A DNA stretch of 64,000 nucleotides from Phaeosaccion multiseriatum (GCA_965112735.1 OZ218954.1:3162001-3226000); one strand, 5' to 3'; numbered from the stretch's first letter, positions 820 to 23,624 are shown. Notes: generated by a model not told the origin, from the letters alone. Made by a program: numbers and translations.

Positions 820-16246
<15,427 letters not shown>

Positions 16247-16942: not shown

Positions 16943-17246
16943 CTCAACCCCTGATACACTATCGCCCACATTCTCGATAGCGCGCTATCGGCCGCCGGCC
17001 GATAGCGGATAGCGCACCGGCTGGCGCCGGCCGATAGCGGATAGCGCACCGGCTGGCGCCGGCCGATAGCGGATAGCGTGCCGGCCCGCGCCGGCGATCG
17101 GATAGCTGCTGGCGCCAGCGATAGCGGATAGCGCGCCGGCTGGCGCCGGCGATAGCGGATAGCGTGCCGGTTGCGACGGCGATAGCGGATAGCGCGCCGG
17201 CTGGCGCCGGCGATAGCGGATAGCGGATAGTGTATCAGGGGTTGAG
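16943..17246. mobile_element. MITE/foldback-like element family 1 (304 bp)
   Basis: Perfect 21-bp terminal inverted repeats CTCAACCCCTGATACACTATC (16943-16963) / GATAGTGTATCAGGGGTTGAG (17226-17246). Interior is ~30-bp GC-rich subrepeats (GATAGCGGATAGCGC...GGCTGGCGCCGGC). No coding capacity and no clear TSD. An inverted partial copy lies at 36186-36260. Confidence 0.75.
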
Positions 17247-17529
17247 TGAACAAGAGGAAGTCAATGAAAATAAAAGTAAAGTCTTTCTCGGGGGAACCGG
17301 CGGGAACCATATCCAGAACCTGTTCGCTGCATCCGAGGCAATACATCCATCAATTGCAGCAGCATCGCCCTCCTTACTAAAGAAGCGACAGCCTCCAGTT
17401 CCCTCGGTATTCTTGGGCCATCTTCAAGAAACGTGGAGCAGCAGGCGCCAGGTTTCTTTTGCCTCTGTGAACAAGGAGGAACGAGCGAAGAAAAAGGAAC
17501 GGGGAGGGGGGGGGGGAGGAAGGAGAGAA

Positions 17530-20500
17530 ATGACAGTCCCTGACGTGCTGGTGTCGCTGTTTAATTGCACGGGAGGAGCTCAATGGGAGAACCACAGCGG
17601 ATGGGACGAATTGGGCACCATAACACCGCGCAATCGTCGCCATGATTTGTATGGGGTGAATGGTGTGCGGAATGGCTATTGCTATTTAAAAAAGGTTGCA
17701 AGCGTAGTCCAACTCAAGCTATATGGCAACGGACTAAAAGGTGAGTGACGTGTTGGTCCTTCACGGGCCTGGCTGAAGGGGTCTTAAAGAGATTGGTGCT
17801 GCCCTTGTCCACACACAGGCACGATACCGGCCGAGCTTGGCCGATTACAAGCACTGACGGTGCTTCGCCTTGATGGCAACAAGCTGACAGGTGGGTTACA
17901 GGCATGATGCCATCCACACCTCTCGTCCCTTCTCCTCGTGTGCTCACAGTCCTGAGGGGCTTTTTAAGACGTGTGCTGCTGCCCTTGTTGTCCATACACA
18001 GGCACGATACCGGCCGAGCTTGGCGGTTTACAAGCACTGACGGAGCTTTACCTTGATGGCAACGAGCTGACAGGTGGGTTACAGGCATGATGCTGTCCAC
18101 GCCTCGTCCCTTCTCCTCGTGTGTTCACAGTCCTGAGGGTTTTTTTATGACGTGTTGCTGCTGCCCTTGTTGTCCACACACAGGCACGATACCGGCCGAG
18201 CTTGGCCGATTACAAGCACTGGAGCAGCTTTATCTTAATGGGAACAAGCTGACAGGTGGGTTACGGGCATGATCCCGTCCACGCCTCGTCCCTTGTCCTC
18301 GTGTGTTCACAGTCCTGAGGGGCTTTTTAAGACGTGTTGCTGCTGCCCTTGTCCACACACAGGCACGATACCGGCTGAGCTTGGCCGATTACAAGCACTG
18401 GAGCAGCTTTATCTTCATGGAAACAAGCTGACAGGTGGGTTACGGGCATGATGCCATCCACACCTCGTCCCTTCTCCTCGTGTGTCCACAGTCCTGAGGG
18501 GCTTTTTAAGACGTGTTGCTCCCCCTGTCCACACAGGCACGATTCCTGCGGAGCTTGGGTCTCTACGCAGACTACGTTGCGCCTCTTTTACTCCCGGGAA
18601 CCCTGATCTCCACGGTAAGCCCTTCCAGATGGTCCGAAGCCTCCTCTTGCTTGAATGTCTCTTCTCTTCCTCCAAACTCCATGGGATTCGACTGTACTTC
18701 GCGGTTAAGCAAACCACAAGTGACTTCCCCTGCGCTCGAGGAGGAGAGGAGACCCCGCTCTGTCCTGCCTTGCTGTGTAGTAGGTGTAGCAATGGGTTGG
18801 CGTGACTGACTCTCTCTGACGCGCCGATCTCTCTTCTATGCGCGGTCCGCAGGCAACCCCAGTAGCTTGATATGCCGGGGCGACGTGCAGATTTGGCAGC
18901 GAGACCTTCCGCTGCTGACCGAGAGAGATATAGCCCGCTACGAGCTGCAGACTGAAAGGGCCTCCTTCATCACGCTCAAGGCCGAGCTTGAGCAGGCCAG
19001 ACGAGACACAGAGTCTCTGCTGGAGGAGGCACAAAGAGCGTCGCTGTCCTCCGGGGTGGACATGCTGCTGGCCGTTACGGACGCCGTAGCGAGCACCAGA
19101 GGCCACAAGCAGAAGGAGCACAGCACTGACTTGCAAGAGCAGCATCAGAGAGAGGGTGTTGAGGAAAGGGCCCAACTTCCAACAGCCTCCTGGAGGGGTC
19201 TACTCAAGGCCATTGAGCTCATGTCCAAAGGCGAAACGACGCAGGACAGTGGCACAGTCGGGACAGAGGCTCTGGCTGAGATGGTGCAGGAGGAAAGGCG
19301 GGCAAGCTGGCACTGGGACTCTCTCAAGATGCATCAGAGCATACTGAGGAAGTGGAGCCAGTCTGTGTCGGGGGAGGCTCGGGCGGAAGAGGTTAGCATG
19401 AGTGAGATCCAGGTGGTGTTGGTTGACATCAAAGGGCTTACGGGGAAGAGCTTGCATGAGGTCGTGGCTGCTCGAGACGGGGAGAGGAAAAGCCTGGTGG
19501 ACGCGATGAGCCAGCTTCTCCTGATGAGTGCGAGAGAGGAGCTGCCCGACAAGATCGACGCCGAGAAGAGAGAGATCGAGAGTGTGGAGGGTCTGCTGGC
19601 ACCGCTGAATGAGTTCCAATTGTCATTTAGGGACCTGCTTGAGGAGGACGGAGGGCAGGGCGAGGACGAAAGCTTCGACATTGGTGCGCTGTGCACAGAG
19701 GTGCTGCAAGCTGTGAGGCAGTGGGAGGCAGCGCACGATCTCGCTGCCCTCGCGCAGAGCACTGACGGGCGCTGCAGAGAGCTGGGGCAGGCGCTGGCGA
19801 AAGCGCTTGGGTCGCTGGGAGGCACAAGCAGCGGAGTCGAGGAGGGAGCACGAGAAGTGGGAGAGAGCGAGGACGATGATGGCGATATACGGCGGTGCCT
19901 TCGACTGGCGGCCAAGGCGGCGCAGGCGGCGGTCAACGACGAAGACATCGGCAGCGAATTAAGCTCCTTGCTCAAAGACCTTCCGCTCATCGCCGTCCTG
20001 CAGGCTGGGGAGCGCCTGCTCGCTTACCACCGTCAGAGGGTGGAAAGCATGGAGGGACTTGGCGCCAGACAAGGCGTCTTCTTCGACGTGCTCGCTCAGC
20101 AGCAGGGGGTAAGCATCGCCTTCCACCACACGTTTGCACTCTCTTCACTCTCTCTATCTCGGCTCGAAGATACTCAGCACAGAGGAGCGAAAGTACTCCA
20201 CGAAGTGTGTGGCTCTGACGGAATCCATTGTGCCGCTAGACGCCTCCGCTCTTTGGACATTTGACATGCTCTGATGACTCGTCCTGTGCCCTCCAGGTGG
20301 TGTCCAGCGCGTGCTACCCTCCCGACATAAGCGGACTCAGGGCCCTCCGCGCGGAGCTGCACGATCTCCAGGACGAGGTGGATATGCTGAAGCTCAAGAT
20401 CGCTCAGAAGCAGCGCCGGGGAGAGCCCACCGACGGCCTGCAGGCAGAGCTGAGGCGCGTCATCTCCGACATCACTCAGAAGGTAGGGCGAGTGCTGTAT

Positions 20501-22860
20501 GGGGTTGGCTTAGTGGGTCCGAAAGCGCTCTCGATCCTACCCTCCTCTTGGGCACACAGAGCAGCGCGACTGACGTCTCTCCTCTCCTGTTGGCTGTGTG
20601 GCTGTGCTCCCCCGCCCAAGTAGAAGCTAAGCCGGCACATCATGGCGGAGGAGAGCAAGCTGTACCGCCTGGCGCTGGAGCACTACCCCGAGCTGCTGCT
20701 GGAGGGCAACGAGTGGGGCAAGGAGGTGGGCAATGACGCCTCCTCCTTTGGGGCAGAGGCGCGGCGTCTGGGCCTGCTTGCAGATGGCCGGACGCTGCAG
20801 AGCTTCGCCAAGCAGACGCTGCTCTCCACGCAGGCGGGAAGGCGTGTCTACCTCGTGGAGGAGGCAGGGGAGTCCATGGCAGAGCAGCAGCAGCAGCAGC
20901 AGGACGGTGTGCCTCTCCGGCGGAAAATGGTGGTTAAAGAGTTCAGCTTGAAGCTGGAACGGGACATGTGGCACTTCTACAGACAGGTGCGTCTGGCCTG
21001 TCCCTCTCACGCATAGCCGTGAGTTACTGAGAAGTGAGCCCAAACGCACGCACTCACGTCAGAGCCTGCTCTCCCCTCCTCCTCACCTCCCGTACTGTGA
21101 CCAACAGGTTGCCCTGCTGCACCAGCTGAGGCATCCCAACCTCGTGGGCGTGTGTGCTGTGTTCCAGGACGTCACGGCGGGCTCTTGCTACCTGCAGATG
21201 CCGCACTATGGGGGAGGAGATCTCCGAGCCTGGATGGACGCCAACCCCGCCACGGCCAGGGATGCCGTCTTCTGCGCGCAGGTATGTGTGTGTGTGTGTG
21301 TGTGTACATGTGTGTGCTTGCGTGTGTGTGTGTGTGTGCAGACAGAGGGTGGACTGAGCGGGGAACAGAGTCAAACCCCCCCAAATTTATATCCAGTCCT
21401 ACCTTTCCACTGAGCGTCTCTTCGCTTCCGTCCGCCGTCCGCGCCTCGCAGATTCTGAGCGACGTGTTGGCGGGGCTCCACCACCTTCACGCCAGCGGCC
21501 TCGTGCTCTGCGACCTCAAGCCTTCCAATGTGCTCCTCACCACGCGAGGCACCGCCGTGCTGTCGGACTTTGACGGGCTACGCAAGGAGGATGACTTGGC
21601 CAGCGGCATGGGATCGACCACTTTTGTAGGAGGCATCCAGGGAACTATGCGCTATCTCCCTGCAGAGCTGCTGCAACCGCCGGGGACGAGTGTGATGAAA
21701 AACCTCATCACTCCAAGCGTCGACATGTTCGCTTTTGGGAGGGTTGCGGAGGAGCTGCTGCAAGAAGGGGTGCAGCTCAGTTGGCGAAGAGGGGAGGGAG
21801 GCGACAGGAAGGCAGAGCACCGCAGGAGATGGGACTCGCTCAAAGGCTTGATCGCTGCACTGGTAGCTGATGACCCGGCCAAGAGGATGAGCAGCTCTGA
21901 CGCGCTGGCCCACTCTCTCTTGGTGGAGCTCGGTAGAAGGACCACGGAGGGAGAGGACAGGGTGAAGCAGCGCAAGCTCCAGTGCGTCATCTGCTTTGAC
22001 ACATTCCTCGCTGCGGAGGGGGTGCAATGCGACGCGAAGCACTTCATCTGCGACGAATGCCTGGAAGGGTACGCGACGGCCAAGAGTGAGTCTGAAGAGA
22101 GGAAGGCGCTGTACAAGGGCGGGCTGCAGTGCCCCCAGCCTGGCTGCGCGTCAAGTCCCTTCCAAGGACACACCATTGCCAGCCACGTGTCCGCCTCCGT
22201 GTATGAGGCGTATCGCACGGCGCTGAACGCGGGGCTGGAGACCAAGGTTGTGCAAGACATGGAGAGGGTTCACGAGGTGAGGATGAAGGTGGGGGTGAGG
22301 ATGATGGATGGAGATCGTTTGGTGTCTTGCTAGATGCCGTTCATACGGGCCATTCATGTGGACTGTGTGGGGACTGTGTGTGGCTTGTCTTCACCGTTGC
22401 TGGCCATTCTCTCGCCATTTGCGCCCCCTCGTTGTGCAGGAGAGGCTGGAGGCGATGCGCAGACACTTTGCCAATCGATCGGCGGCCGACGCCCTCGAGG
22501 AGGAGGCCGGAGACCCGTCAGCACTCGAGGAGGAGGCCGGAGACCCGTCAGCACTCGCTCCGTGTCATCAAAACGGCCATCAACCTGGCCTGCCCACGCT
22601 GCAAGCAGGCCTTCGTGGACTTCACCCACTGCTTCGCCCTCCAATGTGGCCGCTGTTCTGCGGGCTTTTGGGCCTACTGCCTCGCGGACTGCGGTAGGGA
22701 CACTCACAGACGCGTGGCATCATGTGCTCTGAACCGGACTCGACGTGTATTCGGCAGCTTCGACGTCTTCGAGGCCGCCCAAAAGGGCAGGAGGGAGAAG
22801 CTGCTGGCGGCCTACCTGCACTACTACAGCGACTACGTAGGTGCGCGGAGAATGCGATGA
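17530..22860 (+). CDS. LRR - helical/coiled-coil - protein kinase - RING/RBR-like protein; apparent frameshift near the C-terminus (possible pseudogene)
   Basis: Exons 17530-17740 (LRR N-cap: LVSLFNCTGGAQW...LYGNGLKG), four 72-nt LRR exons, 18537-18614, 18853-20108, 20297-20482, 20624-20986, 21108-21281, 21452-~22288, 22440-22860. Kinase motifs VVKE, LRHPNLV, LCDLKPSNVLL, SDFD, GTMRYLPAE, DMFAFG. RING CVICFD...C...HFICDEC...CPQPGC. Second Cys cluster CPRC...DFTHCFALQCGRC lies in a shifted frame. Confidence 0.82.
17819..18614 (+). repeat. Tandem array of ~180-bp units, each one 72-nt LRR exon plus a conserved intron
   Basis: Phase-1 exons 17819-17890, 18002-18073, 18184-18255, 18363-18434 encode GTIPAELGxLQALxxLxLxGNxLT. 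Capping exon 18537-18614. Introns are near-identical (gtgggttacrggcatgat...cacacag). Confidence 0.93.
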
Positions 22861-23240
22861 AAAAAAAGGTTCCCGCCCCTGCCCCTCCCAAATTGAAATT
22901 CAAATTGATTATGATGTACAGTATATTTTATTATTATTTATTATAATAATAAAATATTCATATATATATTATTTATATATATATATATATATATACTCAT
23001 GTTCCCATGGCTGCTCTCCTGTATTGCCACGAGCTGAAATCGCGGAGCGAGCAGGCCAGTTCGAGAGATGAGACTCGAATGAGATGACATCGGGCTGAAT
23101 CCGTTATTTCCGCATGTCCTTCAGCAGCAGTCGCAGGGCTGTGCGGGATGGTATCGGGTCTGTGACCGCTTGCCTTCATCTCATCAAGCAAGGCAAACGC
23201 TTTCAATGGCCCATCGATCGCCCATCTCTCTGTGTTGTTC

Positions 23241-23499
23241 GATCGCCCCCGTGCACGCCTAGCGGCCTGGGCCTATTTTGGAAAATTGCCCGGCCTAGCG
23301 AGGGCCGTAGGCCCTCGGCCTTTTTATAGGCCCGCGGCCTAGGCCCCATATGCCCCTGGCTATAGGCCGCCTAGGGCTGAAAAGTGAGCGGCCTAGAGCG
23401 GCCGGAGGCCGCCGACCTAGGCCTATTTCGGCCGAAGGCCGAGCGGCCTAGCGGCCTAGAGCCAAAACCGCTAGGCCGCTAGGCGTGCACGGGGGCGAT
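23241..23499. mobile_element. MITE/foldback-like element family 2 (~259 bp)
   Basis: Perfect 27-bp inverted repeats ATCGCCCCCGTGCACGCCTAGCGGCCT (23242-23268) / AGGCCGCTAGGCGTGCACGGGGGCGAT (23473-23499). Candidate TSD TGTTC at 23236-23240 and 23500-23504. Interior rich in GGCCTAG/CTAGGCC. Confidence 0.78.
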
Positions 23500-23624
23500 T
23501 GTTCTTTACCGTTTCCGATAAGTCAACAAATAATGCTTGGCTCCTCCCTCCGCCAGATTCTACGCCTCCTCATGAGGGATATGAACCTCCTCAGAGACCT
23601 ACGACGAGGTCATCTTCTCCTGCT

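What the first reader, a model, noticed from the sequence alone, without database searches (positions are those of the whole stretch)
17530..22860. Unusual LRR-kinase-RING(RBR-like) fusion using one-exon-per-LRR architecture
Established: brown-algal (Ectocarpus) LRR-ROCO GTPases have 24-aa LRRs each on a 72-nt exon, proposed to diversify by exon shuffling. Seen: the same type of N-cap and exon design here, but followed by a ~480-aa helical region, a kinase with atypical motifs (no Gly-rich loop, HRD->LCD, DFG->DFD) and RING1 plus a RING2/Rcat-like Cys cluster with no obvious IBR; no Roc-COR domain is visible. Inference: a cytosolic sensor coupling variable LRR recognition to both phosphorylation and ubiquitination, an architecture I do not recognise as described.
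Basis: partly seen in the sequence, partly recalled or inferred. Interest (0 to 1): 0.75.

Follow-up and report, generated by a model that had tools for sequence, protein, structure and literature searches.

The report
Decayed LRR-kinase-ubiquitin-ligase gene copy
This alga has a real gene design that joins a cassette-built leucine-rich-repeat sensor, a helical region, an unusual protein kinase and a parkin-like ubiquitin-ligase module in one chain, but the copy in this window has lost its ligase end to a frameshift and a truncation, so the better-preserved sister copies elsewhere in the genome are the ones to study.

Summary
The exon design is real. There are 12 GT-AG exons: an N-cap exon, four 72-nt one-LRR exons that share one phase, a 78-nt cap exon, a 418-aa exon with no recognised domain, a kinase and an RBR-type RING1.

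- The Rcat-like cysteine cluster is not in frame. Compared with seven paralogs, this copy has a 37-nt insertion (22507-22543), so the natural frame stops at TAG 22695.
- Homology to the paralogs ends at 22820. The conserved last ~31 codons are missing, and an invariant zinc cysteine has become Trp.
- "LCD" is private to this copy; the paralogs have HCD. The missing Gly loop, the non-RD loop and DFD are conserved traits of a wide protist family, not decay.

The genome, an unidentified stramenopile alga, holds about nine copies with 3 to more than 19 LRR exons. At least four, including this one, carry lesions.

Relatives (30-44% identical) have the same kinase-RING1-helices-Rcat core behind ankyrin, LRR, Sel1 or other N-terminal modules. 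One complete MMETSP transcript carries LRR, kinase and ligase together.

I found no paper describing this core. Ectocarpus LRR-kinases with 72-nt LRR exons were published in 2012.

This scan has already reported the same family on other DNA of this genome.

The parts
17257..17529 (+). 5' flank and leader shared with the paralogs. This is the upstream limit of the duplicated segment.
   Evidence: blastn of paralog upstream regions matches the window from 17257 (L015, 85%) or 17360 (L020) up to the ATG.
17530..17740 (+). Exon 1: ATG, an N-cap-like region (LxxLFxxTGGxxW...W) and the first LRR. It ends in phase 1.
   Evidence: Open frame with a GTGAGT donor. Homologous exon 1 is present in L020, L015 and L016. 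No Pfam hit. No hydrophobic signal sequence is seen by eye.
17819..18434 (+). Four one-LRR exons of 72 nt (17819-17890, 18002-18073, 18184-18255, 18363-18434) with their near-identical introns.
   Evidence: All are CAG|72 nt|GTGGGT, phase 1 to 1. TRF finds period 182, 3.9 copies, 91% identity. Exons are 89.1% identical and introns 90.6%. Differences sit at codons 9, 14, 15, 17, 19 and 22.
18537..18614 (+). 78-nt terminal LRR / C-cap exon, phase 1 to 1.
   Evidence: Conserved in L013, L020, L014, L016 and L019; lost in L015.
18853..20108 (+). Exon 7: 418-aa region with no recognised domain; 'helical' is assumed, not tested. It starts in phase 1 and has no ATG near its start.
   Evidence: Open frame. 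No Pfam, PDB or Atlas family. Protein-level conservation runs right from the acceptor (NPGxL..R..VQxWQ) even in the diverged copies L019 and L021.
20297..20482 (+). Exon 8: 62-aa conserved linker, probably helical.
20624..21281 (+). Exons 9 (20624-20986) and 10 (21108-21281): the family's HYPELL extension and the kinase N-lobe. The Gly-rich loop is absent, the beta3 Lys is present, the alphaC Glu is replaced by Gln, and there is a poly-Gln insert.
   Evidence: Aligned as separate fragments to 42 family members. Exon 10 gives a weak Pkinase hit.
21452..22276 (+). Exon 11: kinase C-lobe plus a complete C3HC4 RING1 of RBR type. The catalytic loop reads LCD, with the Leu codon at 21506-21508; the paralogs have HCD. 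The Mg-binding loop reads DFD.
   Evidence: Pkinase E 9.8e-15; zf-RING_14 E 1.4e-5. Paralog alignment. 140 library proteins match at E <= 1e-10, many across both the kinase and RING1.
22440..22697 (+). Exon 12 as it would be translated. The first 22 codons are native linker, then the frame is lost, and it ends at TAG 22695-22697.
22507..22543 (+). 37-nt insertion: 7 nt plus a 30-nt tandem duplication. It shifts the frame.
   Evidence: Absent from all 7 aligned paralogs. TRF finds period 30, 2.1 copies, 100% identity at 22494-22557. Length checked.
22552..22820 (+). Remnant of the Rcat-like zinc domain, now in the +1 frame. The invariant Cys has become Trp (TGG at 22669-22671).
   Evidence: Translation. 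The Cys is invariant in 48 sequences (C65 of A4). IBR_1 scores only E 0.11 here, against 1e-4 for the intact paralog.
22821..22860 (+). Unrelated tail after the duplication breakpoint. The conserved last ~31 codons and the 3' UTR of the family are missing.
   Evidence: Similarity to four paralogs stops at 22820. The conserved tail appears in the family consensus. Downstream DNA is mostly unique or low-complexity.

Best explanation
This locus is a recently decayed copy, probably a pseudogene, of a gene family with about nine members in this stramenopile alga.

The intact design is one soluble chain:
- an N-cap and a variable number of 24-residue LRRs, each on its own 72-nt phase-1 exon;
- about 480 residues with no recognised domain (assumed helical);
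- a divergent kinase: no Gly-rich loop, a non-RD HCD catalytic loop and DFD, but with the catalytic Lys, Asp, Asn and Asp kept;
- an RBR-type RING1, two helices in place of the IBR, an Rcat-like two-zinc domain with an extra invariant cysteine, and two C-terminal helices.

How the intact protein probably works (inferred, not shown): the LRR face binds a ligand. This changes the state of the helical region. The kinase and the E2-loading RING1 / thioester-forming Rcat then modify targets or the protein itself.

In this window the duplicated segment runs only from 17257 to 22820.
- The last ~31 codons and the 3' UTR were never copied or were later lost.
- A 37-nt insertion throws the Rcat-like domain out of frame.
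- One invariant zinc Cys has become Trp.
- The catalytic-loop His has become Leu.

At best the locus makes an LRR-helical-kinase-RING1 protein with no ligase active site.
For: Gene model:
- All 11 introns are GT-AG, the phases are consistent, and each exon is open in its frame.

Family in this genome:
- The exon 11 protein finds 9 strong loci.
- LRR exon counts range from 3 to more than 19.

Lesions in this copy:
- 37-nt insertion relative to 7 paralogs.
- Homology ends at 22820.
- Cys->Trp at a position invariant in 48 sequences.
- His->Leu, against H in all 7 aligned paralogs.

Birth and death in the family:
- L017 has a frameshift with 2 stops in exon 9.
- L021 has an in-frame TAG in exon 11.
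- L016 has a frame break in exon 7.

One chain:
- Exon 7 is conserved as protein from its acceptor onward, has no start codon near its 5' end, and matches the phase of the LRR exons in 8 of 9 copies, including diverged ones.
- The MMETSP complete transcript P0158, and P0156, P0027 and P0005, carry LRR + kinase + RING1, with or without a strict Rcat-like match, in single ORFs.

RBR-like module:
- The Cys/His spacing matches an Rcat, with 9 invariant Cys/His, one more than two zinc sites need.
- A profile of the paralogs aligns every Cys to the CUL9 Rcat (E 0.085) and weakly to parkin and HOIP.
- The AF2 model of a paralog's exon 12 has pLDDT 88.7.
- Its best structural matches are the RNF216 helix-RING2-helix (Z 5.0, 101 residues, rmsd 4.6) and parkin IBR/Rcat (Z 4.6, 42 residues, rmsd 1.8).
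- The AF2 model of relative P0040 (pLDDT 90.9) shows only two helices between RING1 and the Rcat-like domain.

Variable binding face:
- In 54 cassettes, variability sits at codons 15, 17, 19 and 20.
- pN there is 0.44, against framework pS of 0.14 and intron divergence of about 0.09.
Against: - There are no RNA data, so splicing, expression and the linkage of LRR exons to kinase exons are inferred.
- Exons 1-11 are fully open with intact splice sites.
- The terminal-branch dN/dS of this copy is about 0.44, no higher than the other copies (0.24-0.63). Decay is therefore recent, or confined to the 3' end.
- A truncated product could still be used by the cell.
- A CAG at 22549-22551 could act as an alternative acceptor. 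It would put the Rcat-like remnant back in frame (protein 10).
- All RBR assignments are below curated thresholds: zf-RING_14 25.8 bits against 26.6, IBR_1 22.5 against 27, Foldseek E >= 0.34.
- Kinase activity, E3 activity and any immune role are untested.
Confidence: 0.7

Rival explanations
1. The locus is still a working gene. Either the alternative acceptor at 22551/22552 restores the frame, skipping about 37 codons of this copy's exon 12 (the native linker plus the insertion). Or the truncated LRR-helical-kinase-RING1 protein is used as such, for example as a ligase-dead decoy or regulator of its paralogs.
For: - Exons 1-11 are open, with canonical splice sites.
- The terminal-branch dN/dS is about 0.44, which is not neutral.
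- 22552-22857 is in frame with a phase-0 donor and still gives a faint IBR_1 match.
- The promoter-proximal 270 nt were copied along with the gene.
Against: - The candidate acceptor has no pyrimidine tract and lies inside a recent duplication.
- Even if it were used, the domain lacks an invariant zinc Cys and the conserved C-terminal helices.
- The catalytic-loop His is also lost.
- Several sister copies are clearly pseudogenes, so decay is common in this family.
Confidence: 0.15
2. The LRR exons and the helical-kinase-RING exons are two adjacent genes, not one chain. An earlier report of this scan leaned this way for another copy.
For: - There is no RNA evidence.
- The intron between the cap exon and exon 7 is the longest, at 238 nt.
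- One paralog (L017) lacks LRR exons and has a Met near position 56 of the exon 7 alignment.
- LRR-only genes with such exons exist in brown algae (PMC11378527).
Against: - The first ~55 codons of exon 7 are conserved as protein right from the acceptor. They contain no ATG and need a phase-1 upstream exon, which is exactly what the LRR exons supply. This holds in 8 of 9 copies, including ones too diverged for blastn.
- Relatives in other protists have LRR + kinase + ligase in one ORF or one complete transcript.
Confidence: 0.1
3. The 37-nt insertion and the 3' breakpoint are assembly artefacts, and the real gene is intact.
For: The family has near-identical paralogs and tandem repeats, which can mislead assemblers.
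Against: - The assembly is near chromosome scale: 22 contigs for 67 Mb.
- The lesion is a clean 7-nt insertion plus a perfect 30-nt duplication, not a homopolymer error.
- The independent point changes (Cys->Trp, His->Leu and others) mark this as a distinct locus.
Confidence: 0.05

Closest known systems
Ectocarpus and kelp 'type I' LRR exon cassettes: LRR-ROCO GTPases and the five type-I LRR-kinases (Zambounis et al. 2012, PMC3341825; PMC11378527)
   Same: - 72-nt exons, one LRR each.
- Nucleotides 3-71 encode 23 aa in the same register, GxxPxxLxxxxxLxxLxLxxNxLx.
- Variable repeat number, tandem gene pairs and many pseudogenes.
- Variability concentrated on the beta-strand face.
   Different: - There is no Roc-COR domain.
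- The papers mention no RING or ubiquitin-ligase part on the LRR-kinases.
- Whether those kinases belong to this family could not be tested.
- In Ectocarpus the LRR-kinases showed no exon shuffling and no pseudogenes. Here the repeat number ranges from 3 to more than 19 and several copies are broken.
RBR (RING-between-RING) E3 ligases: parkin, CUL9, RNF216, HOIP, HHARI
   Same: - RING1 of parkin type, followed at a distance by a two-zinc domain.
- That domain has Rcat spacing: CPxC-x9-GC-x4-C-x2-C-x4-C-x2-C...H...C, with one extra invariant Cys at the catalytic position.
- Like RNF216, helices flank the Rcat.
   Different: - There is no IBR; two helices take its place.
- There is no His two residues after the candidate catalytic Cys.
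- All database matches are below threshold.
- In this window's copy the domain is out of frame and damaged.
Uncharacterised protist kinase-RING1-Rcat-like proteins: Chromera velia Cvel_13004, Cvel_17561, Cvel_6266 and Cvel_588; Hondaea GBG34857 and GBG34335; Tribonema minus KAG5191561; a Heterococcus transcript; Durusdinium CAK8998897; Pigoraptor; Sphaeroforma XP_014152813; MMETSP0960 Transcript_2315
   Same: - The same core, with the same hallmarks: HYPELL extension, no Gly loop, HxD non-RD, GDFDG, RING1, and CPRC..F.DF.GC.AL.C..C...FC..C.
- 30-44% identity over exon 11.
   Different: - The N-terminal modules differ: ankyrin, RI-type LRR, Sel1, MYND or RanBP1.
- None of those looked up is known to use one-exon LRR cassettes.
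- The sources name them only as generic kinases.
Arabidopsis KEG (RING-kinase-ankyrin-HERC2-like E3; PMC5385374, PMC3697954) and plant kinase-U-box proteins (the latter from my own knowledge)
   Same: A protein kinase domain and an E3 ligase domain in one chain, together with a repeat module. So a kinase-E3 fusion is not without precedent.
   Different: - KEG has a canonical RING at the N-terminus, not an RBR-like RING1 + Rcat after the kinase.
- Its repeats and domain order differ.
- No sequence relationship was seen here.
LRRK2 / ROCO kinases, and the LRR-E3 proteins LRSAM1 and IpaH (from my own knowledge)
   Same: A cytosolic LRR joined to a kinase (LRRK2) or to an E3 ligase (LRSAM1, IpaH).
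   Different: - No Roc-COR domain, and no SAM or NEL domain.
- None of them combines all three activities.

Membership tests
RBR E3 ubiquitin ligases | RING1: a C3HC4 cross-brace RING that binds E2~Ub | tested here: inconclusive
   All eight Cys/His are present in exon 11. zf-RING_14 (parkin RING1 model) scores E 1.4e-5, 25.8 bits, just under the 26.6-bit cut-off. The ligands are invariant or nearly so in 40 relatives. E2 binding is untested.
RBR E3 ubiquitin ligases | An IBR (in-between-RING) zinc domain between RING1 and Rcat | tested here: not met
   The ~95 residues between RING1 and the CPRC motif contain no Cys/His cluster. The AF2 model of relative P0040 shows two helices there (342-379 and 383-396).
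RBR E3 ubiquitin ligases | An Rcat (RING2) domain with a catalytic cysteine, in frame with the rest of the protein | tested here: not met
   In this window's copy the domain is in the +1 frame after a 37-nt insertion, and an invariant zinc Cys has become Trp. In intact paralogs the spacing and the extra invariant Cys fit an Rcat, but the scores are weak: CUL9 E 0.085, IBR_1 E 1e-4, RNF216 Z 5.0, parkin Z 4.6. Thioester formation is untested.
Eukaryotic protein kinases (ePK) | Kinase fold recognised by the Pkinase profile | tested here: met
   Exon 11 alone scores E 9.8e-15, 55.1 bits, against a 31.7-bit cut-off. The relative's model superposes on LIMK1, CDK2, Aurora and IRAK4 at Foldseek E ~1e-16.
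Eukaryotic protein kinases (ePK) | Full catalytic motif set: Gly-rich loop, VAIK Lys, alphaC Glu, HRD, DFG | tested here: not met
   The beta3 Lys, the catalytic Asp, the Asn and the first Asp of DFx are present. The Gly loop is absent, the alphaC Glu is mostly Gln, the loop is HCD rather than HRD, and DFG is replaced by DFD in 38 of 42 family members. This copy also has Leu in place of the His. Activity cannot be decided from sequence.
Brown-algal type I LRR exon cassettes (Zambounis 2012) | One 24-residue LRR per 72-nt exon, same register and phase, so units can be swapped | tested here: met
   Four exons in this window and 54 across six copies fit the pattern AG|72 nt|GT with an open frame, phase 1 to 1. 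The register matches the published consensus.
ROCO proteins (LRR-Roc-COR) | A Roc GTPase plus COR tandem | tested here: not met
   No Ras/Roc or COR hit in any exon at E <= 1. Exon 7 matches nothing in the PDB or the Atlas.
Receptor-like kinases (LRR-RLK, IRAK/Pelle type) | Signal peptide, extracellular LRR, a transmembrane helix and a Pelle-family kinase | tested here: inconclusive
   By eye, no hydrophobic N-terminus or membrane segment appears in any exon; no predictor was run. The kinase has no preferred PDB neighbour: Myt1, IRE1, JNK3, LIMK1, CDK2 and IRAK4 score alike.

The most novel reading that the evidence does not exclude
The family behind this copy would be an undescribed, eukaryote-wide class of single-chain 'repeat sensor - DFD kinase - IBR-less RBR ligase' proteins. 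In this alga the class would have been recruited into a diversifying repertoire built from LRR exon cassettes, that is, an innate-immune-like receptor set whose members both phosphorylate and ubiquitinate. The window's copy would be a product of its fast birth-and-death turnover, or possibly a ligase-dead decoy retained to regulate the intact copies.
Probability: 0.3. Interest if true: 0.75.

Novelty: new variant of a known kind. Interest (0 to 1): 0.45.

Why it matters
- The intact family would be a compact receptor-effector design in which one protein senses through variable LRRs and can both phosphorylate and ubiquitinate. That design is not known from plant or animal immunity.
- The core (an atypical DFD kinase plus an RBR-like ligase with no IBR) is conserved in alveolates, stramenopiles and unicellular relatives of animals, yet appears unstudied. 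A minimal RING1-Rcat ligase without an IBR would also interest RBR enzymologists.
- This locus mainly shows that the family turns over quickly, as the brown-algal ROCO candidates do.
- It also gives a natural set of disabling changes that point to the residues that matter: the catalytic-loop His, a zinc Cys and the C-terminal helices.

Tried and rejected
- Pfam on the N-cap and on single LRR exons gave nothing, because the pieces are too short.
- The word-index protein search with exon 11 found only 2 unrelated kinases, because it sees only proteins of 151-481 aa. The same search with the Tribonema relative added only one protein. These blanks say nothing about longer relatives.
- Foldseek on the 514-aa relative's model returned only kinases, so it could not test the ligase part. 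I therefore folded a paralog's exon 12 on its own.
- Exon 7 was searched against the PDB and the ESM Atlas for a hidden domain (TIR, NACHT, death fold). Nothing was found.
- I considered a transposon insertion as the cause of the 3' truncation and rejected it. 22821-23240 is mostly unique or low-complexity, and the MITE starts only at 23241.
- I considered that the patch of six changed residues at the start of exon 7 was a compensated frameshift and rejected it. The DNA alignment shows substitutions only.
- I considered Vitrella or Chromera as the source organism and rejected it. The best relatives are xanthophytes (Tribonema 44%, Heterococcus 41%), and no library protein exceeds 46% identity.
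- The taxon number printed for MMETSP0960 resolved to a fungus and is probably cut off, so I give no organism for that transcript.
All searches were run exon by exon, by reference.

Full report
**What is in the sequence**

The region is a spliced eukaryotic gene on the + strand.
- From the ATG at 17530 I traced 12 exons. All 11 introns are GT-AG and 78-238 nt long. The phases are consistent, and each exon is open in its own frame.
- Exon 1 (17530-17740) ends in phase 1.
- Four 72-nt exons and a 78-nt cap exon follow. All start and end in phase 1, and every split codon is GGC.
- Nucleotides 3-71 of each 72-nt exon encode 23 residues, TIPAELGxLQALxxLxLxGNxLT. This is the plant-type 24-residue LRR.
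- Exon plus intron forms a 182-nt tandem unit, 3.9 copies at 91% identity.
- The introns (90.6% identical) are at least as conserved as the exons (89.1%). The exon differences sit at codons 9, 14, 15, 17, 19 and 22.

Every search and fold used single exons by reference, or database proteins.

**Domains, exon by exon**
- Exon 7 (418 aa) and exon 8 have no recognisable family in Pfam, the PDB or the ESM Atlas.
- Exons 9-11 hold the kinase. Exon 11 alone passes the Pkinase threshold, E 9.8e-15.
- Exon 11 ends with a complete C3HC4 RING. Its best model is zf-RING_14, the parkin RING1 type, at E 1.4e-5, just under the cut-off.
- No Roc-COR domain, no IBR and, by eye, no membrane segment is present.

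**This copy is damaged**

The exon 11 protein finds nine strong loci in the window's 67-Mb, 22-contig genome. Aligning the 3' ends of seven paralogs with the window shows the following.
- In all paralogs, exon 12 is a 140-145-codon open frame running from a linker helix into the cysteine cluster.
- The window has 37 extra nucleotides at 22507-22543: a 7-nt insertion, then a perfect 30-nt tandem duplication.

Further lesions:
- Similarity to the paralogs stops at 22820. The last ~31 codons, conserved across the wider family, and the 3' UTR are missing.
- A Cys that is invariant in 48 sequences has become Trp, TGG at 22669-22671.
- The catalytic-loop His, present in all 7 aligned paralogs, has become Leu. 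So "LCD" is private to this copy; the paralogs have HCD.

On the other side:
- Exons 1-11 are intact.
- The copy's private substitutions give dN/dS of about 0.44, within the 0.24-0.63 range of its sisters.
- The decay is therefore recent, or limited to the 3' end.

Other copies are broken too:
- L017 has a frameshift in exon 9 and no LRR exons.
- L021 has an in-frame TAG.
- L016 has a frame break in exon 7.

**One gene or two?**

No RNA data are available. Three observations favour one chain.
1. Exon 7 is conserved as protein right from its acceptor (NPGxL..R..VQxWQ). This holds even in copies too diverged for blastn. That stretch has no ATG and needs a phase-1 upstream exon, which the LRR exons supply.
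2. Eight of nine copies keep LRR exons directly upstream, although the number of exons changes.
3. Distant relatives have LRRs, the kinase and the ligase part in a single ORF. One of them is an MMETSP transcript annotated as complete (P0158, 1240 aa).

I put the two-gene reading at about 0.1.

**The wider family**

The exhaustive HMMER search with exon 11 gave 140 proteins at E <= 1e-10. None was above 46% identity, so this organism and its close kin are not in the library. Many hits align across both the kinase lobe and RING1.

Shared hallmarks:
- a HYPELL extension;
- no Gly-rich loop;
- a conserved beta3 Lys;
- the alphaC Glu is usually replaced by Gln;
- the catalytic loop is HCD, HGD or HAD;
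- DFD in 38 of 42 members;
- RING1;
- the motif CPRCxxAFxDFxGCFALxCxxCxxxFCxWC.

N-terminal modules differ between relatives:
- ankyrin (Chromera, Hondaea);
- LRR (P0158, P0156, P0027);
- ankyrin + LRR (P0005);
- Sel1 (P0015);
- MYND + ankyrin (P0042);
- RanBP1 (Sphaeroforma).

The closest named relatives are xanthophytes: Tribonema minus at 44% and Heterococcus at 41%. This fits a stramenopile alga.

**Is the C-terminus RBR-like?**

Evidence in favour:
- The spacing in intact paralogs is C-x2-C-x9-C-x4-C-x2-C-x4-C-x2-C...H...C. Nine Cys/His are invariant, one more than two zinc sites need. This is the Rcat pattern, with the extra Cys at the catalytic position.
- A profile of the paralogs aligns every Cys to the CUL9 Rcat (E 0.085), then weakly to parkin and HOIP.
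- Pfam IBR_1 gives E 1e-4.
- The AF2 model of a paralog's exon 12 has pLDDT 88.7 and is helix, small zinc-type sheets, then two helices.
- Foldseek's list for that model is almost all RBR RING2/IBR chains, but at E >= 0.34.
- VIA-align gives RNF216 helix-RING2-helix at Z 5.0 (101 residues, rmsd 4.6) and parkin at Z 4.6 (42 residues, rmsd 1.8).
- The model of relative P0040 (pLDDT 90.9) shows only two helices between RING1 and this domain, so there is no IBR.

Together this supports "RBR-like without an IBR". Every score is sub-threshold, however, and the fold alone cannot tell an IBR from an Rcat.

**The LRR cassettes**

Six copies yield 54 cassettes of the form AG|72 nt|GT. One copy has 3 and another at least 19.
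- Variability is concentrated at codons 15, 17, 19 and 20, the exposed beta-strand positions.
- pN at those codons is 0.44, against 0.14 for framework synonymous sites and about 0.09 for intron divergence in this window.
- My counting was crude, but the pattern fits diversifying change on the binding face.

**What is known**
- Zambounis et al. 2012 (PMC3341825) described the same 72-nt exon type in Ectocarpus ROCOs. The text contains no occurrence of RING, ubiquitin or zinc.
- PMC11378527 gives the same nt 3-71 register.
- Kinase-E3 fusions as such are known, for example Arabidopsis KEG.
- Five literature searches found nothing on a kinase-RBR or LRR-kinase-RBR design.
- The Phytophthora kinome paper lists no RING or IBR among kinase accessory domains.

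**Earlier reports of this scan**

Other agents have already examined sister copies on other DNA of this genome. Most reached a similar picture of the family, and one leaned towards two genes. I re-tested the family claims myself. The new point here is that this window's copy is a decayed member.

**Verdict**
- The design is a new variant of known kinds: cassette LRRs, plus a kinase-E3 fusion, plus an RBR-like ligase.
- It is interesting at family level, but this locus is a broken example.

Noticed in passing
window 23241-23500: A 260-bp element with perfect 27-nt terminal inverted repeats (23242-23268 and 23473-23499), built largely of GGCCTAG/CGGCC motifs. The genome search returned 133 matching pieces, capped. 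Many are pairs of its two ends a few hundred bases apart, so it looks like a MITE family with longer relatives.
   Followed up: partly
window 16993-17225: A tandem array of a 31-32-nt GC-rich unit (about 7.7 copies, 84% matches). It ends about 30 nt before the point (17257) where homology with the paralogs' upstream regions begins, so it may mark the 5' edge of the duplicated segment.
   Followed up: no
window 22880-23000: A strongly AT-rich, low-complexity stretch that includes an (AT)n run, in a genome of about 58% GC. It lies directly after the truncated gene and is mostly unique apart from simple-sequence matches.
   Followed up: partly
window 21285-21338, and the same intron in L002-L006: The intron between exons 10 and 11 carries a (TG)n microsatellite whose length differs in every paralog. 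It could serve as a handy marker to tell the copies apart.
   Followed up: no
L015 (G000:C1:1004000-1013000), about 3060-3440: This paralog has lost the 78-nt cap exon. Its last ordinary LRR exon runs into the intron that normally follows the cap exon and stays in phase. This shows directly that the cassettes can be removed without breaking the frame.
   Followed up: partly
L017 (G000:C13:134000-143000), about 4088: This copy has no LRR exons. Its exon 7 homology begins at a Met, about 55 codons in, so it may be an N-terminally truncated form. It also has a frameshift in exon 9.
   Followed up: partly
L019 (G000:C13:650000-659999), minus strand, 52-1716: In this diverged copy the last exon reads on for more than 400 extra codons of low-complexity Gln/Gly/Ser/Asp/Glu-rich sequence after the conserved tail.
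   Followed up: no
window 18855-18880 (start of exon 7): Six of the first nine residues after the cap exon differ from all the paralogs (NPSSLICRGD against NPGRLDDRDK). These are substitutions only, and the patch also varies between paralogs. It is a small hypervariable patch next to the LRR domain.
   Followed up: partly
PDB entry 9gmp chain A: The best solved-structure match to the kinase lobe of exon 11 is an 'uncharacterized protein (MAP kinase kinase-like protein)' with an HGD loop (E 2.3e-7). I did not establish its organism or its relation to this family.
   Followed up: no
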